Of a stretch of DNA of 64,000 nucleotides, positions 8,178 to 47,372 are shown piece by piece. The stretch's first letter is position 1. The number at the start of each line of letters is the position of its first letter. Below the pieces are notes generated by a model. It was not told the DNA's origin. It was given only the letters and a program-made list of their open reading frames with translations, and made no database searches. This DNA is from Scyliorhinus canicula. Its lineage: Eukaryota. A program made the position numbers and the translations under genes. The stretch lies in contig NC_052162.1 of NCBI RefSeq assembly GCF_902713615.1, positions 132,084,653-132,148,652 on the forward strand. Reading direction: 5' to 3'.

Positions 8178-8216
8178 AGTTTTTGTCCCAGTCCAGCCCT
8201 GCTTCCTCTCACTGTG
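8178..8216 (-). promoter_or_regulatory. VH 3' RSS, 23-bp spacer
   Basis: Minus strand CACAGTG-AGAGGAAGCAGGGCTGGACTGGG-ACAAAAACT directly after ...TACTGTGCTAGACA. Confidence 0.95.
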
Positions 8217-17567: not shown

Positions 17568-18460
17568 ATGGAGGCTAGGGCAGTTGCATGCTCCTCCTGT
17601 AGGATGTGGGTGGTGAGGGATACCACTGGTGTCCCCGCTGACTATACCTGCGGGAAGTGCACCCAACTCCAGCTCCTCAGAGACCATGTTAGGGAACTGG
17701 AACTGGAGCTGGATGAACTTCGGATCATCCGGGAGGCAGAGGGGGTTATCGAGAAGAGTTACAGGGAGGTAGCCACACCCAAGGTACTGGACAAGAGTAG
17801 CTGGGTTACAGTCAGGGAAAAGAAAACTAACAGGCAGACAGTGCAGGGATCCCTCGTGCCCATTCTCCTTCAAAACAAGTATACCATTTTGGATGCTGTT
17901 GGGGGGGATGACCTACCGGGGGAAGGCCCTAGCGTCCGGGTCTCTGGCACTGAGTCTGGCTCTAGGGCTCAGAAGGGATGGGGGGAGCATAGAAAAGCAA
18001 TAGTAATCGGAGATTCAATGGTTAGGGGAATAGATAGGAGATTCTGTGGTCGCGAGCGAGACTCCCGAAAGGTATGTTGCCTCCCGGGTGCCAGGGCCAG
18101 AGATGTCTCGGATCGTGTCTTCAGGATCCTGAAGGGGGAGGGTGAGCAGCCAGAGGTCCTGGTGCACATTGGTACCAACGACGTAGGTAGGACAAGGTAT
18201 GTGGAGGTAATAAACAAGTTTAGGGAGTTAGGCTGGAAGTTAAAGGCCAGGACAGACAGAGTTGTCATCTATAGTTTGTTGCCGGTGCCACGTGATAGCG
18301 AGGCTAGGAATAGGGAGAGAGTGCAGTTGAACATGTGGCTGCAGGAATAGTGTAGGAGGGAGGGCTTCAGGTATTTGGATAATTGGAGCGCATTCTGGGG
18401 AAGGTGGGACCTGTACAAGCAGGACGGGTTGCATCTGAACCAGAGGGGCACCAATATCCT
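17568..18460 (+). pseudogene. CR1 ORF1: N-terminal zinc finger, coiled coil and SGNH/GDSL esterase domain
   Basis: CSSCRMW...CGKC, VIGDSMVRG, VHIGTNDV. A TAG at 18348-18350 (likely from TGG) interrupts the frame, which continues to the DGLHLN motif. Confidence 0.88.
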
Positions 18461-22857: not shown

Positions 22858-24311
22858 TATCCAAGGATTCTATGGCAGGCAAGAAATGAAATTGCAGAGC
22901 CGTTCGCAATGATCTTTTCGTCCTCGCTGTCAACAGGGGTGGTACCAGAGGATTGGAGAGTGGCGAATGTCGTGCCCCTGTTCAGAAAAGGGAATCGGGA
23001 TAACCCTGGGAATTACAGGACTGTTAGTCTTACTTCGGTGGTAGGCAAAGTAATGGAAAGGGTACTGAGGGATAGGATTTCTGAGCATCTGGAAAGACAC
23101 TGCTTGATAAGGGACAGTCAGCACGGATTTGTGAGGGGTAGGTCTTGCCTTACAAGTCTTATTGATTTCTTTGAGGAGGTGACCAAGCATGTGGATGAAG
23201 GTAAAGCAGTGGATGTGGTGTACATGTAATGTAGTAAGGCATTTGATAAGGTTCCCCGTGGTAGGTTTATGCAGAAAATAAGGAGGCATGGGATAGTGGG
23301 AAATTTGGCCAGTTGGATAACAAACTGGCTAACCGATAGAGGAGAGTGGTGGTGGATGGCAAATATTCAGCCTGGAGCCCAGTTACCAGTGGCGTACCGC
23401 AGGGATCAGTTCTGGGTCCTCTGCTGTTTCTGATTTTCATTAACGACTTGGATGAGGGAGTTGAAGGGTGGGTCAGGAAATTTGCAGATGATACGAAGAT
23501 TGGTGGAGTTGTGGATAGTGAGGAGGGCTGTTGTCAGCTTCAAAGAGACATAGATAGGATGCAGAGCTGGGCTGAGAAGTGGCAGATGGAGTTTAACCCT
23601 GACATGTGTGAGTTTGTCCATTTTGGAAGGACAAATATGAATGCGGAATACAGGGTTAACGGCAGGGTTCATGGCAATGTAGAGGAGCAGAGAGATCTTG
23701 GGGTCTATGTTCATAGATCTTTGCAAGTTGCCACTCAAGTGCATAGAGCTGTGAAGAAGGCCTATGGTGTGCTGGTGTTCATTAGCAGAGGGATTGAATT
23801 TAAGAGTCGTGAGGTGATGATGCAGCTGTACAAAACCTTGGTCAGGCCACATTTGGAGTACTGTGTGCAGTTCTGGTCACCTCATTTTAGGAAGGATGTG
23901 GAAGCTTTGGAAAAGGTGCAAAGGAGATTTACCAGGATGTTGCCTGGAATGGAGAGTAGGTCTTACGAGGAAAGGTTGAGGGTGCTAGGCCTTTTCTCAT
24001 TAGAACGGAGAAGGATGAGGGGCGACTTGATAGAGGTTTATAAGATGATCAGGGGAATAGATAGAGTAGACAGTCAGAGACTTTTTCCCCGGGTGGAACA
24101 CACCATTACAAGGGGACATAAATTTAAGGTAAATGGTGGAAGATATAGGGGGGATGTCAGAGGTAGGTTCTTTACCCAGAGAGTAGTGGGGGCATGGAAT
24201 GCACTGCCTGTGGAAGTAGTTGAGTCGGAAACGTTAGGGACCTTCAAGCGGCTATTGGATAGGTACATGGATTAGGGTAGAATAATGGAGTGTAGATTAA
24301 TTTCTTCTTCA

Positions 24312-24530
24312 GGGCAGCACGGTAGCATTGTGGATAGCACAATTGCTTCACAGCTCCAGGGTTCCAAGTTCGATTTCGACTTGGGTCACTGTCTGTGTGG
24401 AGTCTGCACATCCTCCCGGTGTGTGCATGGGTTTCCTCCGGGTGCTCCGGTTTCCTCCCACAGTTCAAAGATGCGCAGGTTGGGTGGATTGGCCATGATA
24501 AATTGCCCTTAGTGTCCAAAATTCTATGAT
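24312..24530 (+). mobile_element. tRNA-derived HE1-like SINE inserted in the CR1-A 3' UTR (internally deleted)
   Basis: GGGCAGCACGGTAGCATTGTGG (A-box-like), AGTTCGATTTC (B-box-like), core GGGTTTCCTCCGGGTGCTCCGGTTTCCTCCCACAG. Confidence 0.85.
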
Positions 24531-25059
24531 TAACCTAGGACAAAAGTTCGGCACAACATCGTGGGCTGAAGGGCCTGTTCTGTGCTGTATTTCTCTATCT
24601 ATCTATCTATCACCCCTGAAGGGCCTGGCTCGAACTTCCAGGTTCTGCCCCCTAATTCTGGTCACCCCCATCCCCACCAGGGATAGTTTCTCTCTATAGA
24701 ACCGATCAAATCTTTTATTCGGCTTCAACTGCTCGATTGGATCACCCTTTAATCTTCTATCTTCTATATTTGAGGGAATATGAGCCAAATATAACCTGTC
24801 CTCAGGATTTAACCCTTTCTGTCCGGGTTCTCCACAAGTGATCCAACCAGAGCTTTATTCAATCGGAGCACAGCGACCACCTCTTTGTATTCCAGTGTTC
24901 ATCACCAGCTACTGCACATTGAGAGATTCTGTTTCAATCTGATGTGAAGATTCATTAAAACCCAAATCCTGCCTGTTGTCTCTTTCACATGAAGTAAATT
25001 TTCCACCTTGCCCCTCGTGTCGGACACGATTGGTTATTCCACATGTGGGACATTTATTT

Positions 25060-26300
25060 CAATCAGCTTTGTGATTGGTGTAAATGACATGCTGTATGAG
25101 TGTGACCATGGTGCACTGACCCTCCTCATCCTGTTCAACATGTCTGCAGCCTTTCACACGATTGACCACATCATCCTCCCCCAATGTCTCTTCTCCATTA
25201 TCCAGCAAAGTGGGACGGCCCTCGCCTGTTTCCACTCTTCCCTGTCCAGTCATCGCCAGAGGTTCCCCTGCAATATCTTCTCTTCCTACCTCAACATCAT
25301 TACCTCCGGAGTTCCCAAGATTCTCGGTCTCTCTCCGATTGATAAAAATATCTTAAATCTGTGTTAATAACCCTCCGGCCAATGAAATCAGTTCCTCGAG
25401 ATTTACTCTGTGAAGAAACCTTGTAACATTGAACGGGCAGTTTTATTCACCCTCTCCTCAACTTCAATATGAGAACCATCCCAGCTTCTCCACACTCTCC
25501 ACATCCCCCATCCCTGCCACCATTCGGAATGGGAAGACGGAAGTCACTGTCTTCAGCTCCCAACACAAACTCTGTTCTTCAGTCACTGATTCCATCTCCA
25601 TCCCTGGCCACTGTCTCTGGCTGAATTGGGCCATTCACAGTCTCGGCCTCTAATCTGACTCTGAGCTGAGCATCCAAACCTCATCCTCTCCCTCACAAAG
25701 ACCACCTACTTCTGACCCTCTCACATCAGCCTTCTTCAACACTTCCTCAATTTATTCACTGCTCAAACCTTCCTCTCTACTTCAATTCCCTCCAGACAAC
25801 CCGATAATAATAATCTTGGTCACAAGTACGATTACATTAACATTGCAATGAAGTTACTGTGAAAGTCCCCGAGTGGCCACACTCTGGCACCTGTTCGGGT
25901 ACACTGAGGGAGAATTCAGAATGTCTAATTCACCAACAGTACGTCCTTCGAGACTATTTCAATGATCTCCTGGCTGTCCGCCCATCTCCCACCCTCCATA
26001 GATTTTACACTGGCTTTCAGTCCACCAGTGCCTCCCTGTTATAATTCCCATCCAGATTTTCAAATCCCTTCATGGTCTCACCCCTCCCTATCCCTAACTT
26101 CCCGCAAGCCCCAAATCCCTGCAGGAAATCCGCGTTCCTGCAACTCCGGCCTCTTGTCCATCCGACACTTCCTTTCCTCTATCACTGGCTGCTGTACCTT
26201 CAGTTGATGAGGCTCTAAGTGCTGGAATTCACACTGGACCCCTCTGTCTCTCCAGAGTTCAGACCTTCTTTAACACTGTCCTTAAAAACTACCGCTTCAT
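25060..26300 (+). mobile_element. Old L2-clade LINE fragment
   Basis: LLILFNMSAAFHTIDHIIL...ITSGVP resembles L2 RT (LDLSAAFDTVDH). Followed by a pyrimidine-rich L2-like 3' region. Confidence 0.6.
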
Positions 26301-26353
26301 TAATCTTCTGCTCACCGTCCTGTGAATAAAACCTTCTTGATCCTCTGCCCCAC

Positions 26354-26617
26354 CGGGAAAACGGGGCTGGTGGGATGGAGAATCCCGCTGCAGGCGGGGG
26401 AGGCAGCGTGCGGGAAAACGGGGCTGGTGGGATGGGGAATCCCGCTGCAGGCGGGGGAGGCAGCGTGCGGGAAAACGGGGCTGGTGGGACGGAGAATCCC
26501 GCTGCAGGCGGGGAGGCAGCGTGCGGGAAAACGGGGCTGGTGGGATGGAGAATCCCGCTGCAGGCGGGGAATGCAGCGCGCGGGAAAACGGGGCTGATGG
26601 GATGGAGAATCCCGCCC
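26354..26617. repeat. 57-bp tandem repeat, about 4.6 copies, built from a MITE terminus
   Basis: CGGGAAA at 26354, 26411, 26468, 26524, 26581. Each unit carries GGAGAATCCCGC. Confidence 0.85.
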
Positions 26618-29600
26618 GCTATATCCTGTAATCCCTGGATTGTGGCCCTGGGGGCTGCTTGCAGTCCCAGTCATGTCCACTGGAGCTCCTAATGCAGGGA
26701 GTGGAGAGCTGCCACGCAGTCAGGTTGGCTGGCAGCTCTATGAGGTGGGATATCCTCTCTAATGAGGGGCTGAAGTCCCACCTCCAGTCAGTTAACCCTT
26801 GTTGAAATGTTAACTGGCTGCAGGGCAGGCAGTATTAGCGGGAATGTGTTCTCCACCAACTCTTCAGATGGCAGGAAGGGAAACATCTCATTCCTAAAAC
26901 CCCTGGTCATAAAGCCATTACAGGGGGAGAAGGAAGCCATTCAGCCCATTGAGACCACACCATCGCTCAGTAACACATACTAGTCAGTCCCATTCTCCCG
27001 CTCTCTCCCCGTATCTCTACAAGATCATTTCCCCCAAACCCAATTATATGCCATCTGGAGTCACAAAATCTGAAATTTCCTTCGCCCTTTCAGATAAAGG
27101 CAACTATCAGTAAATCCAATTTGGAAATAAAAGTGGATTGTCCCACTTTCTCAAGGCAATCCTCCAAACGTGGGATAGGGTAATAGTTCCCTATCCGGAA
27201 GAGTCCGTTCTTGTAACTGCATTCACCTTTCGATAGTCCACACACAACCATTGGGTACCGTCTGGTTTAGGTACCATCACTATGGGTGAGCTCCATTGGC
27301 TGCAACCCACTTCAATTATGCCATTTTTCAGCATACTCTCAATCTCTCTGTTAACCTGTGCCAATTTGAAAGGATTAAGTCTATATGGATGTTGTTTGAT
27401 AGGAACAGCATTTCCCACATCTATATCGTGTACAGCCATTTTAGTACTTCCCAATTTATCTCTATAAACTTGCCCATGTGATATCAATAACTCTTTCAGG
27501 TCAGTTCGTTTTTCCTCTGGAAGGTAACTTAACAATTCATCCCAATTTTTAAGAACATCCTCATTTTCCAATTTAATTTGAGGTATGTCAAGTTCACAGT
27601 CATCTGGATTTGGTTCGTCACTTTGAGTTAGAATCATTAAAATTTCCTTTTTCTCTCCTTCCCTTTCAAAGTACCTTTAAGCATATTCACACGACACACT
27701 CGGTGTGTCTTCCTTCTATCTGGTGTTTTTACCACATAATTCACCTCACTTAATTTCTTTTCAATCTGATACGGTCCACAAAACCGAGCTTTTAAAGGTT
27801 CACCTACCACTGGTAACAACACTAAAACTTTATCCCCACTGTCAAAACTGCGAACTTTGGATTTGTTGTCCGCTACCCATTTCATCACATTTTGTGCAAC
27901 TTTCAAATGTTGTCCATCCAATTCACCTGCTCTATTTAATCATTCCCTAAAATTTGGCACGTAATCCAATCGTGTAATTTCCGATTTCTCACTCACCAAT
28001 TTTTCTTTAATCAATTTAAGTGGTCCTCTTACCCCATGACCAAAAATTAGTTCAAAAGGACTAAATTTGGTAGACTCATTAGGTGCATCCCTAATTGCAA
28101 ACAATACGAATGGGATTCCTTTATCCCAATCCTCTGGACAATCTTGACCATACGCCCTCAAGATTGTCTTTAATGTCTGATGTCACCTTTCTAACCCTCC
28201 CTGCGATTCTGGATGGTACGCAGTTGATTTAAATTGATTTATTCCTAAGCTATCCATAACTTCTTTGAACAACTTTGAAGTAAAATTCGATCCTTGATCC
28301 GATTGAATTTCTGTGGGTAGTCCATATCTAGTAAAGAATTTAAGTAACTCCACAATCCTTTTAGCTGTAATATTACGTACTGGAATCACATCTGGAAACC
28401 TAGTAGACACATCCATTATAGTCAAAAGATATTGATTCCCACTTTTTGTTTTAGGAAGCGGTCCTACACAATCGATTAGGACCCATGTAAAAGGTTCCTC
28501 AAATGCTGGAATGGGTATTAAGGGCGCTGGTTTTATCACTGTTGAGGTTTCCCTATCACTTTCACATGTATGACATGATTGACAAAATTTGACTACATCT
28601 TTATGTAGTCCAGGCCAATAAAAATGTTTCTGGATTTTAGCTTGAGTTTTCCTTATTCCCAAATGACCTCCCACTGGTACCTCATGTGCAACTCGCAACA
28701 CCTCCTTTCTATACCCTACCGGCAATACTACTTGATGAACTTCTGCCCACTTTTCATCTGCCTGCATATGTACAGGTCTCCATTTTCTCATCAAGGCATC
28801 ACTTTTACGGTAATAACACTCCTGGTATACCCTCAGATTCCTCTTCCGTATATGCTTTCTGATATATCCGTTTTATTTCTACATCTTTCTGTTGTAACTC
28901 TGCCAATTTTCCTGAACTAAAAATATCCGCCTCATCCTCCACCTGTTCTTGTTCTTTTTCAACCATCTGACCAAAAATCGTTTCTGATAATTGCACTTCA
29001 ACTTCATCTTCACTCTTTGATTTCTCCTGTTGTCTTAACTTGTGACTTTGCGACCGGGTTACTACACAATCCGGAAAAATTCAACCCTTCAGTTTTCTGA
29101 TTTTCCACTGGCTTATCAACCACAGTAGGCATCACTCCCACCTGTGATTCAGCTATATCATTACCCAATATAAACTGTATTCCTGGACAAGATCGTTTAT
29201 CTATTACTCCTACTACCACTTCACCACTCTTCCCTGGACTTTCCAACCTTACCTTATATAATGGAACGCTACTCCTCTCACCCTGAATTCCACATATCAC
29301 CACCTTTTCTGGCAACATTCTTCCCAAACTACATAATTCCTCATCTCTTACCATTAAAGATTGACTAGCCCCTGTATCTCTTAAAATTGTGAATTCTTTA
29401 CCTGCTCCTCCTGATACACACGAGTAAACTTTACCTACACAAGTATATTCTTTAAAGACATCTGGCACCGTCTTAACAATTACTTCTTGAACAGGCTGTA
29501 CAATCGTTTGCACCTCCTTCACTTCCCTTGGGCTTTCCTTTCCCACTCCAAGAAATCCCACTGTCTTATCCTGTCTTATCGTGTTTGAAACAAACCTGTT

Positions 29601-30585
29601 GGACTTTAACCTGGTGTTGTAAGACTTCTTACTGTTATCCTGTTTTATCACATCTGCCTTTCCAGTGCTTTTCTTCAAGCCCCAACACTCTGACTTTACA
29701 TGACCTAGTTTATTACAGTGAAAACATTTGAAACTTTTCATTTCTTTTCCACCCTCTTGGATTTATTTTTTAATCTAAGGTATCCACTCTCTTTGTTGTC
29801 TCCCATCAGATCATCTTTACCTTTACCACTTGATTATTTCTCATGTCCCCAGTTTCTGTCCCTCACCGGCTGAAACTGATGTCGGAAACCAATCTTTGAT
29901 TTATGAACTAATTCACAATCATCTGTCATTTCTGCTGCTAATCTCACAGTTTTAACCCTCTGTGTTCCACATGAGTTCTCACTACATCAGTAATTGAATT
30001 TTTAAACTCCTCCAAAAGTATAATTTCTCTGAGAGCTTCATACGTTTGATCTATTTTCAAAGCCCTTATCCACCTATCAAAATGACTCTGTTTGAGCCTT
30101 TCAAACTCCATGTATGATTGACCAAATTCTTTCCTTAAATTTCTAAACCTTTGTCTTTAAGCTTCAGGCACTAGCTCATATGCACTTAAGATGGATTTCT
30201 TCACCTTCTCATACGTTCCAGATACCTCCTCCAGTAGTGATGCAAACATTTCATAAGCTCTACCTACCAGCTTTGTTTGAATCAGTAACACCCACATGTC
30301 CTGTGGCCATTTCACTTGTTTAGCTACAATCTCAAATGAAATGAAAAAGGCTTCCACTTCCTTCTCATCAAACTTTGGCAATGCTTGGACATATTTAAAT
30401 AGATTCCCACCAAGCCTTCAACTATGATGCTCCTTACTATCCTCATCACTATCATCCAACTGTACGTTTCCCTTTATGTCTGCCAATTTTAATTGACTTT
30501 CATGTTTCATAGCCATTTTCTGAATTTCAAACTCCCTCTCTTTATCTTTTTCCCTGATCTGTATCTCCCTTTCTTTTTCTTTTTG

Positions 30586-33556: not shown

Positions 33557-36500
33557 GAAACACAGTTACAGTGTCGGACTGTACACAGTGTGACTGAACT
33601 GTACAGAAACACAGTCACAGTTTGGGACGGTACACAGATTGAGGGGAATGTACAGAAACACAGTTACAGTGTGGGACTGTACACAGTGTGACTGAACTGT
33701 ACAGAAATGCAGTTACAGTGTGGGACTGTACACAGAGTGAGGGAACTGTACAGAAACACAGTTACAGTAGTCGACTGTACAAAGAGTGAGGGAACTGTAC
33801 AGAAACATAGTTACAGTGTGGGACTGTACACAGAATGAGGGAACTGTACAGAAACACAGTTACAGTGTGGGACTGTACGCAGAGTGAGGGAACTGTGCAG
33901 AAACACAATTACAGTGTGGGACTGTACACAGAGTGAGGGAACTGTACAGAAACACAGTCACAGTTTTGGACGGTACACAGAGTGAGGGGAATGTACAGAA
34001 ACACAGTTACAGTGTGAGACTGTACACAGTGTGACTGAACTGTACAGAAATGCAGTTACAGTGTGGGACTGTACACAGAGTGAGGGAACTGTACAGAGTT
34101 ACAGTTACAGTGTGGGACTGTTCACAGTGTGAGGGAACTGTACAGAAACACAGTTACAGTTTGGGACTGTACACAGAATGAGGGTAATGTACAGAAACAC
34201 AGTTACAATGTAGGACTGTACACAGAGTGAGGGGAATGTACAGAAACACAGTTACAGTGTGGGACTGTACACAGTGTGAGGGAACTGTACAGAAATGCTG
34301 TTACAGTGTGGGACTGTACACAGAGTGAGGGAACTGTACAGAAACACAGTTACAGTGTGGGACTGTGCACAGAGTGAGGGTACTGTACAGAGACAAAGCT
34401 ACAGTGCGGGGCCGTACACAGAGTGAGGGAACTGTACAGAAGCACAGTTACAGTGTGGGACCGTACACTGTGTGAGGAAACCATACAGAATCAGAGTTAC
34501 AGTATGGGACTGTTCACAGAGTGAGGGGATTGTATAGAAACACAGGTACAGTGTGGGACTGTACACATAATGGGGGTATTGTACCGAAACACAGTTACAG
34601 TGTGGGACTGTACACAGAGTGTGGGACTTTACAAAAACACAGTTACAGTGTGGGACTGTACACAGCGTGAGGGAAATGTACAGAGATACAGTTACAGTGT
34701 GGAACTGTTTACGGAGTGAGGGAACTGTGCAGAAACACAGTTACAGTGTGGGACCGTACACATAGTGAGGGAACCGTACAGAAACAGAGTTACAGTGTGG
34801 GACTGTTCACAGAATAAGGGGATTGTACAGAAACACAGTTACAGTGTGGGACTGTACACAGTGTGAGGGAACTGTATAGAAACACAGTAACAGTGTGGGA
34901 CCGTACACAGAGTGATGGAACTGTACAGAAACACAGTTACAGTGTGAGACTGTACACATTGTGAGGGAACTGTACAGAAACACAGTTACAGTATTCGACT
35001 GTACAAAGAGTGAGGGAACTGTACAGAAACATAGTTACAGTGTGGGACTGTACACAGAATGAGGGAACTGTAGAGAAACATAGTTACAGTGTGGATTGTA
35101 TGCAGAGTGAGGGGACTGTGCAGAAACACAATTACAGTGTGGGACTGTACACAGAGTGAGGGAACTGTACAGAAATGCTGTTACAGTGTCGGACTGTACA
35201 CAGAGTGAGGGTACTGTACAGAGACAAAGCTACAGTGCGGGGCCGTACACAGAGTGAGGGAACTGTACAGAAGCACAGTTACAGTGTGGGACCGTACATT
35301 GTGTGAGGAAACAATACAGAATCAGAGTTACAGTATTGGACTGTTCACTGAGTGAGGGGATTGTATAGAAACACAGGTACAGGGTGGGACTGTACACATA
35401 ATGGGGGTACTGTACCGAAACACAGTTAGTGTGGGACTGTACACAGAGTGTGGGACTTTACAAAAACACAGTTACAGTGTGGGACTGTACACAGCGTGAG
35501 GGAAATGTACAGAGATACAGTTACAGTGTGGAACTGTTGACGGAGTGAGGGAACTGTGCAGAAACACAGTTACAGTGTGGGACTGTACACATAGTGAGGG
35601 AACCGTACAGAAACAGAGTTACAGTGTGGGACTGTTCACAGAATAAGGGGATTGTACAGAAACACAGTTACAGTGTGGGACTGTACACAGTGTGAGGGAA
35701 CTGTATAGAAACACAGTAACAGTGTGGGACCGTACACAGAGTGATGGAACTGTACAGAAACACAGTTACAGTGTGAGACTGTACACATTGTGAGGGAACT
35801 GTACAGAAACACAGTTACAGTATTCGACTGTACAAAGAGTGAGGGAATGTACAGAAACACAGTTACAGTGTGGGATTGCAGACAGACTGAGGGAACTGTA
35901 CAGAAATACAGTTACAGTGTGGGGCTGTACACAGAGTGAGGGAACTGTACAGAAACACAGTTACAGTGTGGGACTGTACACAGAATGAGGGAACTGTACA
36001 GAGACACAGTTGCAGTGTGGGACTGTACACAGTGAGGTTAATGTACAGTAACACAGTTACAATGTGGGACTGTACACAGAGTGAGGGGAATGTACAGAAA
36101 CACAGTTACAGTGTGGGATTGCAGACAGAGTGAGGGAACTGTACAGAAATACAGATACAGTGTGGGACTGTACACAGTGAGGGAACTGTACAGAAACACA
36201 GTTACAGTGTGGGACTGTGCACAGAGTCAGGGTACTGTACAGAGTCAAAGCTACAGGGCGGGGCCATACACAGAGTGAGGGAACTGTACAGAAGCACAGT
36301 TACAGTGTGGTACCGTACACTGTGTGAGGGAACCATACAGAATCAGAGTTACAGTGTGGGACTGTTCAAGAGTGAGGGGATTGTACAGAAACACAGGTAC
36401 AGTGTGGGTCTGTACACATAATGGGGGTACTGTACTGAAACACAGTTACAGTGTGGGACTGTACACAGAGTGTGGGACTTTACAAAAACACAGTTACAGT

Positions 36501-39500
36501 GTGGGACTGTACACAGCGTGAGGGAAATGTACAGAGACACAGTTACAATGTGGAACTGTACACGGAGTGAGGGAACTGTGCAGAAACAAAGTTACAGTGT
36601 GGGACCGTACACATAGTGAGGGAACCGTACAGAAACAGAGTTACAGTGTGGGACTGTTCACAGAATAAGGGGATTGTACAGAAACACAGTTACAGTGTGG
36701 GACTGTACACAGTGTGAGGGAACTGTATAGAAACACAGTAACAGTGTGGGACCGTACACCGAGTGATGGAACTGTACAGAAACACAGTTACAGTGTGAGA
36801 CTGTACACATTGTGAGGGAACTGTACAGAAACACAGTTACAGTATTCGACTGTACAAAGAGTGAGGGAACTGTACAGAAACATAGTTACAGTGTGGGACA
36901 GTACACAGAATGAGGGAACTGTACAGAAACACAGTTACAGTGTGGGACTGTACGCAGAGTGAGGGAACTGTGGAGAAACACAATTCCAGAGTGGGACTGT
37001 CCACAGAGTGAGGGAACTGTACAGAAACACAGTCACAGTTTGGGACGGTACACAGAGTGAGTGAACTGTACAAAAACACAGTTACAGTGTGGGACTGTAC
37101 ACAGTGTGACTCAACTGTACAGAAATGCAGTTACAGTGTGGGACTGTACACAGAGTGAGGGAACTGTACAGAAACACAGTTACAGTGTGGGACTGTACAC
37201 AGAGTGAGGGAACTGTACAGAGTTACAGTTACAGTGTGGGACTGTTCACAGTGTGAGGGAACTGTACAGAAACACAGTTACAGTTTGGGACTGTACAGAG
37301 AATGAGGGTAATGTACAGAAACACAGTTACAATGTAGGACTGTGCACAGAGTGAGGGGAATGTACAGAAACACAGTTACAGTGTGGGATTGCTGACAGAG
37401 TCAGGGAACTGTACAGAAATACAGTTACAGTGTGGGGCTGTACACAGAGTGAGGGAACTGTACAGAAACACAGTTACAGTGTGGGACTGTACACAGTGAG
37501 GGTAATGTACAGAAACACAGTTACAATGTGGGACTGTACACAGAGTGAGGGGAATGTACAGAAACACAGTTACAGTGTGGGATTGCAGACAGAGTGAGGG
37601 AACTGTACAGAAATACAGATACAGTGTAGGGCTGCACACAGAATGAGGGAACTGTACAGAAACACAGATACAGTGTGGGACTGTACACAGAGTGAGGGAA
37701 CTGTACAGAAACACAGTTACAGTGTGGGACTGTGCACAGAGTGAGGGTACTGTACAGAGACAAAGCAACAGTGCGGGGCCGTACACAGAGTGAGGGAACT
37801 GTACAGAAGCACAGTTACAGTGTGGGACCGTGCACTGTGTGAGGGAACCATACAGAATCAGAGTTACAGTGTGGGACTGTTCACAGAGTGAGGGGATTGT
37901 ACAGAAACACAGGTACAGTGTGGGTCTGTTCACATAATGGGGGTACTGTACCGAAACACAGTTACAGTGTGGGACTGTACACAGCGTGAGGGAAATGTAC
38001 AGTGACACAGTTACAGTGTGGAACTGTTGACGGAGTGAGGGAACTGTGCAGAAACACAGTTACAGTGTGGGACCGTACACATAGTGAGGGAACCGTACAG
38101 AAACAGAGTTACAGTGTGGGACTGTTCACAGAATAAGGGGATTGTACAGAAACACAGTTACAGTGTGGGACTGTACACAGTGTGAGGGAACTGTATAGAA
38201 ACACAGTAACAGTGTGGGACTGTACACAGAGTGAGGGAACTGTACAGAAACACAGTCACAGTTTGGGACGGTACACAGAGTGAGGGGAATGTACAGAAAC
38301 ACAGTTACAGTGTGGGACTGTACACAGTGTGACTGAACAGTACAGAAATGCAGATACAGTGTGGGACTGTACACAGAGTGAGGGAACTGTACAGAGTTAC
38401 AGTTACAGTGTGGGACTGTACACAGTGTGAGGGAACTGTACAGAAACACAGTTACAGTTTGGGACTGTACACAGAATGAGGGTAATGTACAGAAACACAG
38501 TTACAATGTAGGACTGTACACAGAGTGAGGGGAATGTACAGAAACACAGTTACAGTGTGGGATTGCAGAAGAGTGAGGGAACTGTACAGAAATACAGTTA
38601 CAGTGTGGGGCTGTACACAGAGTGAGGGAACTGTACAGAGACACAGTTACAGTGTGGGACTGTACACAGTGAGGGAACTGTACAGAAACACAGTCACAGT
38701 GTGGGACGGTACACAGATTGAGGGAACTACAGAAACACAGTTACAGTGTGGGACTGTACACAGTGTGAGGGAACTGTACAGAAATGCAGTTACAGTGTGT
38801 GACTGTACACAGAGTGGGGGAACTGTACAGAGTTACAGTTACAGTGTGGGACTGTACACAGTGTGAGGGAACTGTACAGAAACACAGTTACAGTTTGGGA
38901 CTGTACACAGTGTGAGGGAACTGTGCAGAAACACAGTTAGTGTGGGACTGTACACAGAGTGAGGGAACTGTACAGAAACACAGTCACAGTGTGGGATGGT
39001 ACACAGATTGAGGGAACTACAGAAACACAGTTACAGTGTGGGACTGTACACTGTGAGGGAACTGTACAGAAATGCAGTTACAGTGTGGGACTGTACACAG
39101 AGTGAGGGAACTGTACAGAAACACAGTTACAATGTGGGACTGTACAGAGAGTGAGGGAACTGTACAGAAACACAGTCACAGTGTGGGACAGTACACAGAT
39201 TGAGGGAACTACAGAAACACAGTTACAGTGTGGGACTGTACACAGTGTGAGGGAACTGTACAGAAATGCTGTTACAGTGTGGGACTGTACACAGAGTGAG
39301 GGAACTGTACAGAAACACAGTTAAAGTGTGGGACTGTACACAGTGTGAGAGAACTGTACAGAAACACAGTTACAGTTTGGGACTGTACACAGTGTGAGGG
39401 AACTGTACAGAAACACAGTTACAGTGTGGGACTGTACACAGTGTGAGGGAACTGTGCAGAAACACAGTTAGTGTGGGACTGTACACAGCGTGAGGGAACT

Positions 39501-42500
39501 GTACAGAGACACAGTTACAGTGTGGGACGGTACACAGATTGAGGGAACTACAGAAACACAGTTACAATGTGGGACTGTACACAGAGTGAGGGAACTGTAC
39601 AGAAACACAGTCACAGTGTGGGACGGTACACAGATTGAGGGAACTACAGAAACACAGTTACAGTGTGGGACTGTACACAGAGTGAGGGAACTGTACAGAA
39701 ACACAGTTACAGTGTGGGACTGTACACAGAGTGAGGGAACTGTACAGAAACACAGTTACAGTGTGGGACTGTACACAGTGTGAGGGAACTGTACAGAAAC
39801 ACAGTTACAGTGTGGGACTGTACACAGAGTGAGGGAACTGTACAGAAACACAGTTACAGTGTGGGACTGTACACAGTGTGAGGGAACTGTACAGAAACAC
39901 AGTTACAGTGTGGGACTGTACACAGAGTGAGGGAACTGTACAGAAACACAGTTACAGTGTGGGACTGTACACAGAATGAGGGAAATGTAGAGAAACATAG
40001 TTACAGTGTGGATTGTATGCAGAGTGAGGGGACTGTGCAGAAACACAGTTACAGTGTGGGACTGTACACAGAGTGAGGGAACTGTACAGAAACACAGTCA
40101 CAGTGTGGGACGGTACACAGAGTGAGGGAACTGTACAGAGTGACAGTTACAGTGTGGGACTGTACACAGTGTGAGGGAACTGTACAGAAACACAGTTACA
40201 GTTTGGGACTGTACACAGAATGAGGGAAATGTACAGAAACACAGTTACAATGTGGGACTGTACACAGAGTGAGGGGAATGTACAGAAACACAGTTACAGT
40301 GTGGGATTGCAGACAGAGTGAGGGAACTGTACAGAAATACAGTTACAGTGTGGGGCTGTACACAGAGTGAGGGAACTGTACAGAAACACAGTTACAGTGT
40401 GGGACTGTACACAGAGTGAGGGAACTGTACAGAGACACAGTTACAGTGTGGGACTGTACACAGTGAGGGAACTGTACAGAAACACAGTTACAATGTGGGA
40501 CTGTACACAGAGTGAGGGGAATGTACAGAAACACAGTTACAGTGTGGGATTGCAGACAGAGTGAGGGAACTGTACAGAAATACAGTTACAGTGTGGGGCT
40601 GTACACAGAGTGAGGGAACTGTACAGATACAGTGTGGGACTGTACACAGAGTGAGGGAACTGTACAGAAACACAGTTACAGTGTGGGACTGTGCACAGAG
40701 TGAGGGTACTGTACAGAGACAAAGGTACAGTGTGGGACTGTACACAGTGAGGGAACTGTACAGAAATGCAGTTACAGTGTGGGACTGTACACAGAGTGAG
40801 GGAACTGTACAGAGACACAGTCACAGTGTGGGACGGTACACAGTGTGAGGGAACTGTACAGAAACACAGTTACAATGTGGGACTGTACACAGAGTGAGGG
40901 AACTGTACAGAAACACAGTTACAGTGTGGGACTGTACACAGTGAGGGTAATGTACAGAAACACAGTTACAGTGTGGGACTGTACACAGAGTGAGGGGAAC
41001 TGTACAGAAACACAGTTACAGTGTGGGATTGCACACAGAGTGAGGGAACTGTACAGAAACACAGTTACAATGTGGGACTTTACAATGAGGGAACTGTACA
41101 GAGACACAGTTACAGTTTGGGACTGTTCACAAACTGGGGGAACTGTACAGAAACACAGTTACAGTGTGGGACTGTGCACAGAGTGAGGGTACTGTACAGA
41201 GTCAAAGCTACAGTGCGGGGCCGTACACAGAGTGAGGGAACTGTACAGAAGCACAGTTACAGTGTGGGACCGGACGCTGTGTGAGGGAACCATACAGAAT
41301 CAGAGTTACAGTGTGGGACTGTTCACAGAGTGTGGGACTTTACAAAAACACAGTTACAGTGTGGGACTGTACACATAAGTGGGGTAACTGTACCGAAACA
41401 CAGTTACAGTGTGGGACTGTACACAGCGTGAGGGAAATGTACAGAGACACAGTTACAGTGTGGAACTGTTGACGGAGTGAGGGAACTGTGCAGAAACACA
41501 GTTACAGTGTGGGACCGTACACATAGTGAGGGAACCGTACAGAAACAGAGTTACAGTGTGGGACTGTTCACAGAGTAAGGGGATTGTACAGAAACACAGT
41601 TACAGTGTGGGACCGTACACAGTGTGAGGGAACTGTATAGAAACACAGTAACAGTGTGGGACTGTACACAGAGTGAGGGAACTGTACAGAAACACAGTCA
41701 CAGTTTGGGACGGTACACAGAGTGAGGGGAATGTACAGAAACACAGTTACAGTGTGGGACTGTACACAGTGTGACTGAACAGTACAGAAATGCAGATACA
41801 GTGTGGGACTGTACACAGAGTGAGGGAACTGTACAGAGTTACAGTTACAGTGTGGGACTGTTCACAGTGTGAGGGAACTGTACAGAAACACAGTTACAGT
41901 TTGGGACTGTACACAGAATGAGGGTAATGTACAGAAACACAGTTACAATGTAGGACTGTACACAGAGTGAGGGGAATGTACAGAAACACAGTTACAGTGT
42001 GGGATTGCAGAAGAGTGAGGGAACTGTACAGAAATACAGTTACAGTGTGGGGCTGTACACAGAGTGAGGGAACTGTACAGAGACACAGTTACAGTGTGGG
42101 ACTGTACACAGTGAGGGAACTGTACAGAAACACAGTCACAGTGTGGGACGGTACACAGATTGAGGGAACTACAGAAACACAGTTACAGTGTGGGACTGTA
42201 CACAGTGTGAGGGAACTGTACAGAAATGCAGTTACAGTGTGTGACTGTACACAGAGTGGGGGAACTGTACAGAGTTACAGTTACAGTGTGGGACTGTACA
42301 CAGTGTGCGGGAACTGTACAGAAACACAGTTACAGTTTGGGACTGTACACAGTGTGAGGGAACTGTGCAGAAACACAGTTAGTGTGGGACTTTACACAGA
42401 GTGAGGGAACTGTACAGAAACACAGTCACAGTGTGGGATGGTACACAGATTGAGGGAACTACAGAAACACAGTTACAGTGTGGGACTGTACACTGTGAGG

Positions 42501-45500
42501 GAACTGTACAGAAATGCAGTTACAGTGTGGGACTGTACAGAGAGTGAGGGAACTGTACAGAAACACAGTTACAATGTGGGACTGTACAGAGAGTGAGGGA
42601 ACTGTACAGAAACACAGTCACAGTGTGGGACAGTACACAGATTGAGGGAACTACAGAAACACAGTTACAGTGTGGGACTGTACACAGTGTGAGGGAACTG
42701 TACAGAAATGCTGTTACAGTGTGGGACTGTACACAGAGTGAGGGAACTGTACAGAAACACAGTTAAAGTGTGGGACTGTACACAGTGTGAGAGAACTGTA
42801 CAGAAACACAGTTACAGTTTGGGACTGTACACAGTGTGAGGGAACTGTACAGAAACACAGTTAAAGTGTGGGACTGTACACAGTGTGAGGGAACTGTGCA
42901 GAAACACAGTTAGTGTGGGACTGTACACAGCGTTAGGGAACTGTACAGTGACACAGTTACAGTGTGGGACGGTACACAGATTGAGGGAACTACAGAAACA
43001 CAGTTACAATGTGGGACTGTACACAGAGTGAGGGAACTGTACAGAAACACAGTCACAGTGTGGGACGGTACACAGATTGAGGGAACTACAGAAACACAGT
43101 TACAGTGTGGGACTGGACACAGCGTGAGGGAAATGTACAGAAACAGAGTTACAGTGTGGGAATGTTCACAGAATAAGGGGATTGTACAGAAACACAGTTA
43201 CAGTGTGGGACTGTACACAGTGTGAGGGAACCGTATAGAAACACAGTAACAGTGTGGGACCGTACACAGAGTGTTGGAACTGTACAGAAACACAGTTACA
43301 GTGTGAGACTGTACACATTGTGAGGGAACTGTACAGAAACACAGTTACAGTATTCGACTGTACAAAGAGTGAGGGAACTGTACAGAAACATAGTTACAGT
43401 GTGGGACTGTACACAGAATGAGGGAAATGTAGAGAAACATAGTTACAGTGTGGATTGTATGCAGAGTGAGGGGACTGTGCAGAAACACAATTACAGTGTG
43501 GGACTGTACACAGAGTGAGGGAACTGTACAGAAACACAGTCACAGTTTGGGACGGTACACAGAGTGAGGGAACTGTACAGAGTTACAGTTACAGTGTGGG
43601 ACTGTACACAGTGTGAGGGAACTGTACAGAAACACAGTTACAGTTTGGGACTGTACACAGAATGAGGGTAATGTACAGAAACACAGTTACAATGTAGGAC
43701 TGTAAACAGAGTGAGGGGAATGTACAGAAACACAGTTACAGTGTGGGATTGCAGACAGAGTGAGGGAACTGTACAGAAATACAGTTACAGTGTGGGGCTG
43801 TACACAGAGTGAGGGAACTGTACAGAAACACAGTTACAGTGTGGGACTGTACACAGAGTGAGGGAACTGTACAGAGACACAGTTACAGTGTGGGACTGTA
43901 CACAGTGAGGGAAATGTACAGAAACACAGTTACAATGTGGGACTGTACACAGAGTGAGGGGAATGTACAGAAACACAGTTACAGTGTGGGATTGCAGACA
44001 GAGTGAGGGAACTGTACAGAAATACAGTTACAGTGTGGGGCTGTACACAGAGTGAGGGAACTGTACAGATACAGTGTGGGACTGTACACAGAGTGAGGGA
44101 ACTGTACAGAAACACAGTTACAGTGTGGGACTGTGCACAGAGTGAGGGTACTGTACAGAGACAAAGGTACAGTGTGGGACTGTACACAGTGAGGGAACTG
44201 TACAGAAATGCAGTTACAGTGTGGGACTGTACACAGAGTGAGGGAACTGTACAGAGACACAGTCACAGTGTGGGACGGTACACAGTGTGAGGGAACTGTA
44301 CAGAAACACAGTTACAATGTGGGACTGTACACAGAGTGAGGGAACTGTACAGAAACACAGTTACAGTGTGGGACTGTACACAGAGTGTGGGACTTTACAA
44401 AAACACAGTTACAGTGTGGGACTGTACACAGCGTGAGGGAAATGTACAGAGACACAGTTACAGTGTGGGACCGGACACAGAGTGAGGGAACCGTACAGAA
44501 ACACAGTTACAGTGTGGGACCGTACACAGAGTGAGGGAACCGTACAGAAACAGAGTTACAGTGTGGGACTGTACACAGAATGAGGGAACTGTACAGAGGC
44601 ACAGTTACAGTGTGGGACTGTACACAGTGTGAGGGAACTGTACAGAAACACAGTTACAGTGTGGGACCGTACACCGAGTGATGGAACTGTACAGAAACAC
44701 AGTTACAGTGTGGACTGTACACAGTGTGAGGGAACTGTACAGAAACACAGTTACAGTATTGGACTGTACACAGAGTGAGGGAACTGTACAGAAACATAGT
44801 TACAGTGTGGGACTGTATGCAGAGTGAGGGAACTGTGCAGAAACACAGTTACAGTGTGGGACTGTATGCAGAGTGAGGGAACTGTGCAGAAACACAATTA
44901 CAGTGTGGGACTGTACACAGAGTGAGGGAACTGTACAGAAACACAGTTACAGTGTGGGATGGTACACAGATTGAGGGAACTACAGAAACACAGTTACAGT
45001 GTGGGACTGTACACAGTGAGGGAAACTGTACAGAAATGCAGTTACAGTGTGGGACTGTACACAGAGTGAGGGAACTGTACAGAAACACAGTCACAGTGTG
45101 GGACGGTACACAGTGTGAGGGAACTGTACAGAAACACAGTTACAATGTGGGACTGTACACAGAGTGAGGGAACTGTACAGAAACACAGTCACAGTGTGGG
45201 ACGGTACACAGATTGAGGGAACTACAGAAACACAGTTACAGTGTGGGACTGTACACTGTGAGGGAACTGTACAGAAATGCAGTTACAGTGTGGGTCTGTA
45301 CACAGTGTGAGGGAACTGTGCAGAGTTACAGTTACAGTGTGGGACTGTACACAATGTGAGGGAACTGTACAGAACCACAGTTACAGTTTGGGACTGTACA
45401 CAGTGTGAGGGAACTGTACAGAAACACAGTTAAAGTGTGGGACTGTACACAGTGTGAGGGAACTGTGCAGAAACACAGTTAGTGTGGGACTGTACACAGC

Positions 45501-47372
45501 GTGAGGGAACTGTACAGAGACACAGTTACAGTGTGGGACGGTACACAGATTGAGGGAACTACAGAAACACAGTTACAATGTGGGACTGTGCACAGAGTGA
45601 GGGAACTGTACAGAAACACAGTCACAGTGTGGGACGGTACACAGATTGAGGGAACTACAGAAACACAGTTACAGTGTGGGACTGTACACAGAGTGAGGGA
45701 ACTGTACAGAAACACAGTTACAGTGTGGGACTGTGCACAGAGTGAGGGTACTGTACAGAGACAAAGCTACAGTGCGGGGCCGTACACAGAGTGAGGGAAC
45801 TGTACAGAAGCACAGTTACAGCGTGGGACCGTACACTGTGTGAGGGAACCATACAGAATCAGAGTTACAGTGTGGGACTTTTCACAGAGTGAGGGGATTG
45901 TACAAAAACACAGGTACAGTGTGGGACTGTACACATAATGGGGGTACTGTACCGAAACACAGTTACAGTGTGGGACTGTACACAGAGTGTGGGACTTTAC
46001 AAAAACACAGTTACAGTGTGGGACTGTACACAGCGTGAGGGAAATGTACAGAGACACAGTTACAGTGTGGAACTTTTCACGGAGTGAGGGAACTGTGCAG
46101 AAACACAGTTACAGTGTGGGACCATACACATAGTGAGGGAACCGTACAGAAACAGAGTTACAGTGTGGGACTGTTCACAGAATAAGGGGATTGTACAGAA
46201 ACACAGTTACAGTGTGGGACTGTACACAGTGTGAGGGAACTGTACAGAAACACAGTTACAGTGTGAGACTGTACACATTGTGAGGGAACTGTACAGAAAC
46301 ACAGTTACAGTATTCGACTGTACAAAGAGTGAGGGAACTGTACAGAAATGCAGTTACAGTGTGGGACTGTACACAGAGTGAGGGAACTGTACAGAAACAC
46401 AGTTACAGTGTGGGACTGTGCACAGAGTGAGGGTACTGTACAGAGACAAAGCTACAGTGCGGGGCTGTACACAGAGTGAGGGAACTGTACAGAAACACAG
46501 TTCACTGTGTGGGACGGTACACAGTGTGAGGGAACTGTACAGAAATGCAGTTACAGTGTTGGACTGTTCACAGAGTGAGGGAACTGTACAGAAAGTACAG
46601 TTACAGTGTGGGACTGTACACAGAGTGAGGGAACTGTACAGAAACACAGTTACAGTGTGGGACTGTACACAGTGTGAGGGAACTGTACAGAAAGACAGTT
46701 ACAGTGTGGGACTGTACACAGTGTGAGGGAACTGTACAGAAACACAGTTACAGTGTGGGACTGTACACAGAGTGAGGGAACTGTACAGAAACACAGTCAC
46801 AGTGTGGGACGGTACACAGAGTGCGGGAACTGTACAGAAACACAGTTACAGTGTGGGACTGTACACAGAGTGAGGGAACTGTACAGAAAAACAGTTACAG
46901 TGTGGGACTGTTCACAGAGTGAGGGAACTGTACAGAAACACAGTTACAGTGTGGACTGTACACAGTGTGAGGGAACTGTACAGAAACACAGTTACAGTAT
47001 TCGACTGTACAAAGAATGAGGGAACTGTACAGAAACATAGTTACAGTGTGGGACTGTACACAGAATGAGGGAACTGTACAGAAACACAGTTACAGTGTGG
47101 GACTGTACGCAGCGTGAGGGAACTGTGCAGAAACACAATTACAGTGTGGGTCTGTACACAGAGTGAGGGAACTGTACAGAAACACAGTCACAGTTTGGGA
47201 CGGTACACAGAGTGAGGGGAATGTACAGAAACACAGTTACAGTGTGGGACTGTACACAGTGTGACTGAACTGTGCAGAAATGCAGTTACAGTGTGGGACT
47301 GTACACAGTGTGAGGGAACTGTACAGAAACACAGTTACAGTGTGGGACTGTACACAGAGTCAGGAAACTGTA
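33557..47372. repeat. 13.8-kb satellite, 49-bp monomer, about 280 copies, with higher-order structure
   Basis: Consensus ACAGTGTGGGACTGTACACAGAGTGAGGGAACTGTACAGAAACACAGTT. GAGGGAACTG recurs at 33788 and 33837. Confidence 0.98.

What the first reader, a model, noticed from the sequence alone, without database searches (positions are those of the whole stretch)
33557..47372. 13.8-kb satellite whose monomer contains a 12-RSS-like motif: about 280 tandem candidate RAG targets upstream of an IgH cluster
Seen in sequence: the 49-bp monomer parses as CACAG(A/T)G + TGAGGGAACTGT (exactly 12 nt) + ACAGAAACA + 21 nt. For example, 34123-34150 is CACAGTG-TGAGGGAACTGT-ACAGAAACA: a perfect heptamer, a 12-bp spacer, and a 7/9 nonamer that keeps A5-A6-A7. 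The commoner monomer has CACAGAG (6/7). All copies point the same way, and I found no comparable 23-RSS on either strand. Established: RAG needs CAC, a 12/23 spacer and the nonamer A-tract. Inference: the array points away from the V 23-RSS (8216-8178) and the D1/D2 3' 23-RSSs, so RAG joining would excise V and leave a signal joint. That would resemble the kappa-deleting element and could inactivate this cluster in a multi-cluster genome. Joining to the J 22-RSS would be inversional. Other possibilities are a RAG sink or fragile site, or a satellite that arose by amplifying a V-end/RSS. Caveat: the monomer is ACAG-rich, so chance resemblance is more likely than in random DNA.
Basis: partly seen in the sequence, partly recalled or inferred. 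Interest (0 to 1): 0.8.

Follow-up and report, generated by a model that had tools for sequence, protein, structure and literature searches.

The report
Ordinary satellite with incidental RSS-like motif
A real 13.8-kb tandem repeat lies 25 kb upstream of a shark antibody heavy-chain gene cluster, and its 49-bp unit does resemble a RAG cutting signal, but the evidence favours an ordinary young satellite whose resemblance is incidental rather than a built-in device for deleting or silencing the cluster.

Summary
The array runs from 33557 to 47372 with a 49-bp period and about 284 same-strand copies. Each unit parses as CACAG(A/T)G, a 12-nt spacer, then ACAGAAACA.

A simple RSS scan picks out the cluster's real RSSs almost exclusively in the other 50 kb. 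It scores satellite units 13-14 of 16, the same as the genuine D-segment 12-RSSs. Shuffled or Markov monomers reach 13 in only 1-4% of trials.

The functional reading is weak:
- The majority heptamer, CACAGAG+TG, was about 35-fold less active than CACAGTG+TG in a published high-throughput RAG assay and fell below a random sequence. Roughly 60-70 units are plausible substrates, not 280.
- RSS-critical positions are no better conserved than the rest. Good heptamers pair with worse nonamers.
- The unit is a dimer of a ~20-bp sub-repeat. The "nonamer" sits on a 6-bp insertion at the sub-repeat junction.
- Nothing beyond the heptamer and nonamer resembles the local RSSs.
- No 23-RSS of the cluster faces the array convergently. 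The array is CpG-poor and separated from V by 25 kb of retroelements.
- Published shark data show rearrangement stays within a cluster and silent clusters stay germline.

Genome-wide distribution could not be tested. The scan has noted other RSS-like arrays near antigen-receptor loci on other DNA of this genome. This satellite itself was not found there.

The parts
33557..47372 (+). 49-bp satellite array, about 284 head-to-tail units, all on the + strand. Composition A 33.5%, G 30.7%, T 19.8%, C 15.9%; CpG o/e 0.15.
   Evidence: TRF; probe matches; composition
34123..34150 (+). Example of the best unit type: CACAGTG, 12-nt spacer, ACAGAAACA (7/7 + 7/9). It is one of 25 such units.
37700..44500 (+). 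Two adjacent blocks of about 3.4 kb (about 70 units each) that are 95-100% identical at a lag of 3442 bp. This is a recent unequal-exchange duplication inside the array, or an assembly duplication.
   Evidence: autocorrelation; paired TRF sub-rows
8217..8511 (-). IgH V exon (V-set domain, ends ...YYCAR). The leader exon is at about 8675-8630.
8178..8216 (-). V 23-RSS: CACAGTG, 23-nt spacer, ACAAAAACT
7761..7840 (-). D1 (coding 7812-7800) with a 5' 12-RSS (7840-7813) and a 3' 23-RSS (7799-7761)
6577..6657 (-). D2 (coding 6629-6616) with a 5' 12-RSS and a 3' 23-RSS. It lies in a 371-bp, 97%-identical duplicate of the D1 region.
6174..6239 (-). D3 (coding 6211-6202) with a 5' 12-RSS (CACTGTG on the gene strand) and a 3' 12-RSS (CACAGCG, 12-nt spacer, CCACAAACT).
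5750..5835 (-). J segment (5797-5750) with a 22-spacer RSS (5798-5835; on the + strand CACTGTG, 22-nt spacer, ACAATAACT)
10300..29750 (.). Retroelement-filled spacer between V and the array: LINE endonuclease and RT fragments (about 10.3-11.3 kb and 17.5-24.3 kb) and an LTR-element integrase on the minus strand (28.2-28.8 kb).

Best explanation
This is an ordinary, evolutionarily young satellite. A ~20-bp unit (CACAG-AGTGWGGGAACTGTA) became a 49-bp dimer and was amplified and homogenised by unequal exchange into a 13.8-kb array. The array sits in retroelement-rich intergenic DNA about 25 kb upstream of a shark IgH (probably IgW-type) V-D1-D2-D3-J cluster. The 12-RSS-like parse is a by-product of the repeat's CACAG/ACAG/CTGT-rich make-up plus a 6-bp insertion at the junction of the two half-units. 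It is neither inherited from a recombination signal nor maintained for RAG. About 60-70 units carry a heptamer context that RAG can use reasonably well, so the array is at most a cluster of cryptic RSSs that might occasionally be nicked in lymphocytes. It has no programmed role in deleting, silencing or buffering the cluster. Shown here: the array's anatomy, scores, variation pattern and orientations. Inferred: the absence of function.
For: 1. Array dynamics are typical of neutral satellites. Units show 86% matches to one another, and there is a ~3.4-kb internal duplication at 95-100% identity.
2. The two halves of the unit align: 17 of 18 aligned positions are identical, and 0 of 2000 shuffles score as well. 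The nonamer ACAGAAACA spans a half-A-specific 6-bp insertion plus the first bases of half B. The heptamer-plus-spacer part recurs in half B with no nonamer.
3. RSS-critical positions (CAC, nonamer A5-A7) are conserved at 0.95 against 0.94 for the other positions. The second most variable column of the 49 is heptamer position 6 (A 66%, T 31%); only position 46 varies slightly more.
4. The R-Y-R heptamer class and a nonamer of 7/9 or better are negatively associated (odds ratio 0.42, p = 0.004; units are not independent).
5. Published SARP-seq values, as % of signal-joint reads with a uniform expectation of 0.024%: CACAGAG+TG 0.0039, CACAGAA+TG 0.0028, CACAGTG+TG 0.135, and the best 9-mers about 1.15. 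Position 6 prefers Y over R by more than 10-fold (PMC9723617). The R/Y classes of the register sites are RRR 114 and RYR 67.
6. With heptamer and nonamer masked, the unit shows no significant similarity to the spacers or flanks of the six local RSSs (p = 0.04-0.40, uncorrected). It also has no similarity to anything else in the window.
7. No 23-RSS in the window faces the array convergently. Mammalian off-target joins use convergent CACs lying in the direction each RSS faces (PMC4995090).
8. The array's CpG o/e is 0.15, so it has no CpG-island or promoter character.
9. In nurse shark, IgH rearrangement occurs only within a minilocus and other clusters remain germline (PMC2435157).
10. A per-satellite chance of 1-4% is not small, given how many tandem arrays this genome holds. 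This window alone has 12, and 31 other satellite notes exist in the scan.
Against: The motif is better than composition predicts (0.9% of dinucleotide shuffles; 0.08% for the 14/16 variant). Units score as well as the cluster's real D 12-RSSs in a scan whose other hits are 6 of 8 genuine RSSs. None of the 11 other tandem arrays in the window has a repeated RSS-like site. The nonamer fits the published purine-A/T-purine rule at positions 4-6 and keeps C2. Unchecked scan notes report other RSS-like tandem arrays near TCR loci in this genome, and one follow-up judged a tandem 23-RSS array to be old, so RSS-related repeats may be a recurring feature here. Genome-wide distribution, chromatin state and RAG activity were not testable. 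All RAG specificity data used are from mammals.
Confidence: 0.7

Rival explanations
1. Incidental but active cryptic-RSS cluster. The array has no selected role, but the ~60-70 T-type units are cut by RAG at a measurable rate in developing lymphocytes. That would make the region a fragile site or a minor RAG sink. This shades into the best explanation.
For: T-type heptamer contexts are 4-6 times above the uniform expectation in SARP-seq: CACAGTG+TG 0.135, CACTGTG+TG 0.154, CACAGTG+AG 0.096 and CACATTG+TG 0.088. The nonamer fits the functional code. CAC density is 92.6 per kb against 37.6 per kb elsewhere. Shark IgM and IgW V segments do make long-range trans-rearrangements to TCR-delta D segments (PMC12227049).
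Against: The array is 25 kb from the cluster's promoter, CpG-poor (o/e 0.15) and satellite-like, so H3K4me3-dependent RAG loading is unlikely (inference). Its orientation is non-convergent with every 23-RSS present. 96 of the 97 partial rearrangements recovered from nurse shark were intra-cluster.
Confidence: 0.15
2. RSS-derived satellite. The array began as an amplified genuine 12-RSS or V-end plus RSS, for example after germline RAG activity, and has since drifted.
For: The full heptamer-12-nonamer architecture scores like real 12-RSSs. The flank 5' of the heptamer (…ACTGTA) loosely recalls a V end (…TACTGTG…). Scan notes report tandem RSS arrays behind V segments in this genome. Germline RAG activity is documented in sharks (PMC2193156; listed but not read).
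Against: No similarity to local RSS spacers or flanks remains once the heptamer and nonamer are masked. The half-unit structure shows that the heptamer-plus-spacer part is itself a repeat lacking a nonamer, and that the nonamer sits on an insertion. The array is not adjacent to any V, D or J segment, and 25 kb of retroelements intervene.
Confidence: 0.1
3. Programmed RAG target. The array is a deleting or silencing element: joining with the V/D 23-RSS of this cluster would excise V. Alternatively, acting like the kappa-deleting element on a same-orientation cluster lying at higher coordinates, it would delete that cluster's D-J-C. A third form is a selected RAG decoy.
For: The array's 12-RSSs would be convergent with the V/D 23-RSSs of any minus-strand cluster located beyond 64 kb (my inference from orientations). 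The many co-oriented copies all have 12-nt spacers, so the array cannot recombine with itself.
Against: The majority heptamer is a poor substrate. There is no purifying signal on RSS positions, and heptamer and nonamer quality are negatively associated. No Ig segment or convergent 23-RSS lies in 47-64 kb. Shark H-chain exclusion is explained without deletion, and silent clusters stay germline.
Confidence: 0.04

Closest known systems
Satellite/minisatellite DNA with higher-order duplication
   Same: Head-to-tail co-oriented units, about 14% divergence between units, large near-identical internal blocks from unequal exchange, a unit built from a shorter sub-repeat, strong CpG depletion and a location among retroelements.
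   Different: The unit happens to contain a heptamer-12-nonamer parse that scores like a genuine 12-RSS. Genome-wide copy number is unknown.
Cryptic RSSs (off-target RAG sites in mammalian genomes)
   Same: CAC-led heptamer plus an A-rich nonamer at a 12-nt spacing, outside any gene segment. Activity depends on the heptamer R/Y pattern, the first spacer bases and chromatin.
   Different: It is tandemly iterated about 280 times. Most copies have a purine at heptamer position 6. No cleavage or joining has been demonstrated.
Kappa-deleting element / RS (mammalian Igk)
   Same: An isolated RSS not attached to a coding segment that can pair with a V-type RSS under the 12/23 rule and inactivate a locus.
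   Different: Kde/RS is a single conserved RSS 3' of the constant region and convergent with its partners, so the constant region is deleted on an excised circle. Here the array is 5' of V and back to back with the 23-RSSs. The chromosome would keep a signal joint, and the element is not demonstrably conserved. (Kde features are stated from general knowledge.)
Tandem 23-RSS minisatellite behind a TCR V segment in the same genome (scan note s1-278411, unchecked by me)
   Same: Tandem repetition of an RSS-like unit at an antigen-receptor locus in this shark.
   Different: That array is reported directly behind a V segment and shared with other species. This one is 25 kb from V, has a 12-nt spacer and shows internal evidence of a non-RSS origin.

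Membership tests
Satellite DNA | Head-to-tail, co-oriented monomers forming a multi-kb array | tested here: met
   284 copies over 13.8 kb, all on the + strand
Satellite DNA | Homogenisation or higher-order blocks from unequal exchange | tested here: met
   3442-bp lag with 95-100% identity across about 3.4 kb
Satellite DNA | Family present at multiple loci or in high copy number in the genome | not testable with these tools
   No shark genome collection is searchable. The ORF-based protein search and the DNA scans found nothing, and the scan-note look-up by sequence was blank.
Functional 12-RSS | Heptamer begins with CAC | tested here: met
   95% of register-aligned units
Functional 12-RSS | Heptamer positions 5-7 follow the favoured R-Y-R pattern (pyrimidine at position 6) | tested here: not met
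   RRR 114 against RYR 67 of 213 register sites. A purine at position 6 is disfavoured more than 10-fold, and CACAGAG+TG scores 0.0039% against 0.135% for CACAGTG+TG. The feature is met only by a ~31% minority.
Functional 12-RSS | 12 (+/-1) bp spacer | tested here: met
   162 sites with an exact 12-nt spacer at 6/7 + 6/9 or better, against 14 at 11 or 13 nt
Functional 12-RSS | Nonamer able to bind the RAG1 nonamer-binding domain (A-tract; purine-A/T-purine at positions 4-6; C at position 2) | tested here: met
   ACAGAAACA is present in 128 of 237 units. The rule is from PMC12711392. The activity of this exact nonamer was not found in the data held.
Functional 12-RSS | Abuts a V, D or J coding segment | tested here: not met
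   The flank is the preceding satellite unit. The nearest gene segment is 25 kb away.
Functional 12-RSS | RAG-dependent cleavage or joining observed | not testable with these tools
   Needs a biochemical or lymphocyte-DNA assay
Kde/RS-type deleting element | Located 3' of the constant region and convergent with the partner RSS | tested here: not met
   The array is 5' of V of the only cluster in the window and back to back with its 23-RSSs. No cluster lies in 47-64 kb.
Kde/RS-type deleting element | RSS positions conserved by selection | tested here: not met
   No excess conservation, and heptamer and nonamer quality are negatively associated

The most novel reading that the evidence does not exclude
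RSS-like tandem arrays may be a recurring, lineage-specific feature of shark antigen-receptor regions. On this reading the array's ~60-70 competent 12-RSS units are used by RAG in lymphocytes or germ cells. They could act as a decoy, as a V-excising element for this cluster, or as a Kde-like deleting element for a same-orientation cluster lying beyond the window's high end. That would add a deletion or buffering layer to heavy-chain exclusion in multi-cluster genomes.
Probability: 0.05. Interest if true: 0.8.

Novelty: new member of a known kind. Interest (0 to 1): 0.27.

Why it matters
If the array were a real RAG target, it would be the first deleting or decoy element described for cluster-type immunoglobulin loci. 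It would bear on how sharks achieve heavy-chain exclusion and on how genomes tolerate RAG. As it stands, it mainly shows that a satellite can mimic a recombination signal as well as genuine D-segment signals do under simple consensus scoring. It also shows that measured RAG preferences (heptamer position 6), within-array variation and orientation are needed before such a motif is read as functional. The possible recurrence of RSS-like repeats near antigen-receptor loci in this genome is worth one systematic genome-wide check.

Tried and rejected
1. Mapping the satellite outside the window.
- A 113-aa satellite ORF searched against the 5.8-billion-protein collection found no candidate.
- Exact DNA probes in metagenome and viral contigs gave 0 hits.
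- The scan-note look-up by sequence was blank, which is uninformative.
2. Reaching other shark Ig clusters through V-protein homologues. Only distant VH sequences of 55% identity or less were returned (turtle, teleost, coelacanth, elephant shark). No shark locus could be fetched.
3. True RIC scoring. The model tables are not available offline. I substituted a consensus-match scan validated on the window's own RSSs, together with published SARP-seq values.
4. Nonamer activity look-up. No supplementary text is held for PMC12711392. The PMC12205992 supplement holds only heptamer-randomised data.
5. TE or TIR origin. There is no similarity between the array's flanks, or between the unit and any other part of the window.
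6. Signal-joint origin. I rejected it by eye: the left half would lack CAC (TACAGTC) and has no nonamer.
7. Structured DNA or RNA. The single-strand DNA fold is unremarkable (z = -1.76), and there are no Rfam matches in the window.
8. A second heptamer in the unit (CACAGTT) and the minus-strand CACTGTA+AC (SARP-seq 0.148%) have no nonamer at 12 or 23 nt, so they are heptamer-only sites.
Full report
**Observation.**
Tandem Repeats Finder reports a single array at 33557-47372 with period 49, 284 copies and 86% matches. A 31-nt consensus probe with up to three mismatches matches 201 times. Every match is on the + strand and inside the array. The quoted example at 34123-34150 reads as stated. Twenty-five units are CACAGTG-12-ACAGAAACA and 63 are CACAGAG-12-ACAGAAACA. 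A total of 126 sites reach 13 of 16 consensus positions with CAC and an exact 12 spacer. There is essentially no 23-spacer site.

**Context.**
The minus strand carries a cluster-type IgH locus:
- a leader exon at about 8675-8630;
- a V exon at 8511-8217, with a Pfam V-set match and only distant VH homologues;
- the V 23-RSS at 8216-8178;
- D1 and D2, each with a 5' 12-RSS and a 3' 23-RSS, lying in a 371-bp duplication that is 97% identical;
- a third D (6211-6202) with 12-RSSs on both sides;
- a J segment (5797-5750) with a 22-spacer RSS.

This layout satisfies the 12/23 rule for every successive join. An earlier scan note places an IgW-like CH1 2.9 kb beyond the window's start. I did not test that note.

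Between V and the array lie 25 kb of LINE endonuclease/RT fragments and an LTR-element integrase. Beyond the array (47-64 kb) there are repeat fragments and a 7TM-receptor ORF, but no Ig segment.

**Is the resemblance more than chance?**
I used a deliberately simple scan: CAC required, heptamer plus nonamer matches of 13/16 or better, and a spacer of exactly 12 or 23. On the 50 kb outside the array it returns eight hits. Six are the cluster's genuine RSSs, so the scan is specific.

The real D 12-RSSs score 13-14, the same as satellite units. None of the 11 other tandem arrays in the window has a repeated site at that level. The chance that a composition-matched tandem monomer reaches 13 is:
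- 0.045% for mononucleotide shuffles;
- 0.9% for dinucleotide shuffles;
- 1.2-4.2% for Markov order 2-4.

The motif is therefore unusual for its composition, but only at the 1-in-25 to 1-in-100 level. This genome is full of tandem arrays: 12 in this window, and 31 satellite notes elsewhere in the scan.

**Would RAG use it?**
Hoolehan et al. measured recombination for all 4096 CAC-NNNN-NN 12-RSS variants (PMC9723617). Position 6 prefers a pyrimidine over a purine by more than tenfold. In their Dataset S1 the values are percentages of signal-joint reads. The top five 9-mers sum to the 5.7% stated in the text, so the uniform expectation is 0.024%.

| Heptamer + first two spacer bases | % of signal-joint reads |
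|---|---|
| CACTGTG+TG | 0.154 |
| CACAGTG+TG | 0.135 |
| CACAGTG+AG | 0.096 |
| CACATTG+TG | 0.088 |
| CACAGCG+TG | 0.038 |
| CACATAG+TG | 0.006 |
| CACAGAG+TG | 0.0039 |
| CACAGAA+TG | 0.0028 |
| best 9-mers | about 1.15 |

In the array, CACAGAG+TG occurs 89 times and CACAGTG+TG 48 times. The R/Y classes are RRR 114 and RYR 67. The majority unit is thus about 35 times worse than the minority T-type unit and about six times below a random sequence. Some 60-70 units have a moderately good heptamer context, which is still 8-12 times below the optimum.

The nonamer ACAGAAACA keeps C2 and fits the purine-A/T-purine rule at positions 4-6 (PMC12711392). It is probably adequate, although its measured activity was not available. 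All of these data come from mammalian RAG.

**Signs of selection or of descent from an RSS.**
- Across 156 exact-length units, CAC and nonamer A5-A7 are conserved at 0.95, against 0.94 for all other positions. Heptamer position 6 is the second most variable column of the 49; only position 46 varies slightly more. Positions 1-2 and 48-49 are biased by the tiling method.
- Units with the favoured heptamer class more often have a degraded nonamer (odds ratio 0.42, p = 0.004). The caveat is that duplicated units are not independent. This is the opposite of what co-selection for a complete signal would give.
- The 49-mer is a dimer. CACAG-AGTGAGGGAACTGT-A aligns with CACAG-TTAC-AGTGTGGG-ACTGT-A at 17 of 18 aligned positions, better than all 2000 shuffles. 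The "nonamer" is made of a half-A-specific six-base insertion plus the first bases of half B. The heptamer-plus-spacer part recurs in half B with no nonamer. This points to a satellite that acquired the parse secondarily, not to an amplified RSS.
- With heptamer and nonamer masked, the unit has no significant similarity to the spacers or flanks of the six local RSSs (p = 0.04-0.40, uncorrected).
- Neither the unit nor the array flanks match anything else in the window.
- A block of about 3.4 kb is duplicated at 95-100% identity within the array. This is typical unequal-exchange turnover, or an assembly duplication.

**Geometry.**
The array's signals run heptamer to nonamer towards higher coordinates. 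The V, D1 and D2 23-RSSs run towards lower coordinates and lie at lower coordinates. The pairs are therefore back to back: a join would retain a signal joint and excise V on a circle. The J 22-RSS is co-oriented with the array, so that join would be inversional.

In mammals, however, off-target RAG joins go overwhelmingly to convergent CACs lying in the direction each RSS faces. In the published data, 23-RSS ends joined downstream and 5' 12-RSS ends joined upstream (PMC4995090). By that rule none of the cluster's 23-RSSs looks towards the array.

The array's 12-RSSs would be convergent only with the V/D 23-RSSs of a minus-strand cluster at still higher coordinates. None exists up to 64 kb.

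The array is also strongly CpG-depleted (o/e 0.15, against 0.37 elsewhere in the window), so nothing suggests an H3K4me3-marked RAG entry site (the chromatin step is inference).

In nurse shark, rearrangement occurs only within a minilocus (96 of 97 partial rearrangements). Non-expressed clusters remain germline, which leaves no observed need for a deleting element (PMC2435157). Against this, IgM and IgW V segments do trans-rearrange to TCR-delta D segments in sharks (PMC12227049), so long-range joins by these V RSSs are not impossible.

**What keeps the question open.**
Scan notes from the same genome, which I did not check, mention several related features:
- a 20-copy tandem 23-RSS array behind a TCR V segment, judged old by its follow-up;
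- a 4.7-kb array of CACAGTG heptamers near TCR-gamma V segments;
- a "satellite-built 12-RSS" near a TCR V;
- a SINE with an RSS-like motif.

I could not map the 49-bp family beyond this window with any available collection.

**Verdict.**
I put about 70% on an ordinary young satellite whose RSS-like parse is incidental. About 15% goes to the same satellite being cut occasionally, without a selected role. About 10% goes to an RSS-derived satellite, and about 4-5% to a programmed RAG target. The satellite is new only as a member of a known kind. Interest is low to moderate, and it rests mainly on the possible genome-wide pattern.

Noticed in passing
window 6174-6239 (minus strand): A third D segment (ATACTGGAAC) is flanked by 12-RSSs on both sides. 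The cluster is therefore V(23) / 12-D1-23 / 12-D2-23 / 12-D3-12 / 22-J. Without D3, the D2 23-RSS and the J 22-RSS would violate the 12/23 rule.
   Followed up: partly
window 7588-7957 and 6406-6774: The D1 and D2 regions are a 371-bp direct duplication at 97% identity, separated by a 22-bp tandem array (6973-7468, 22.5 copies). D2 is therefore a recent copy of D1.
   Followed up: partly
window 37700-44500: A block of about 3.4 kb (about 70 units) is duplicated at 95-100% identity inside the satellite at a lag of 3442 bp. It is either very recent unequal exchange or an assembly duplication.
   Followed up: partly
window 746-1432 and 32561-33001: The same 69-bp satellite family appears, in the same orientation, both in the J-C intron and immediately left of the 49-bp array. 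Another scan note reports 69-bp satellite blocks in introns elsewhere in this genome; I did not compare the sequences, so whether it is the same family is unknown.
   Followed up: no
window 61368-62267 (+): An intronless-looking 299-aa ORF matches the rhodopsin-family 7TM receptor profile (Pfam 7tm_1, E = 4e-17). It begins inside TM1, so an upstream exon or a truncation is likely.
   Followed up: partly
window 3731 (+) and 56295 (+): These are the only two non-Ig sites outside the array that score 13/16 or better in the RSS scan: CACAGTG-12-ACACTGACC at the edge of a 36-bp repeat, and CACTGTG-23-AAAAAAACA. They give a background of about 2 chance hits per 50 kb.
   Followed up: no
window 30586-30718: A 133-base run of N (assembly gap or mask) lies inside an ORF on the minus strand (30418-30975) whose family I did not test, about 0.7 kb from the ORFs of the LTR-type retroelement. 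I left it untouched.
   Followed up: no
window 33557-47372, minus strand: Most units carry CACTGTA+AC on the minus strand. In the published assay this heptamer context is as active (0.148%) as the + strand CACAGTG+TG, but it has no nonamer at 12 or 23 nt. These heptamer-only sites are the ones convergent with the J 22-RSS.
   Followed up: partly
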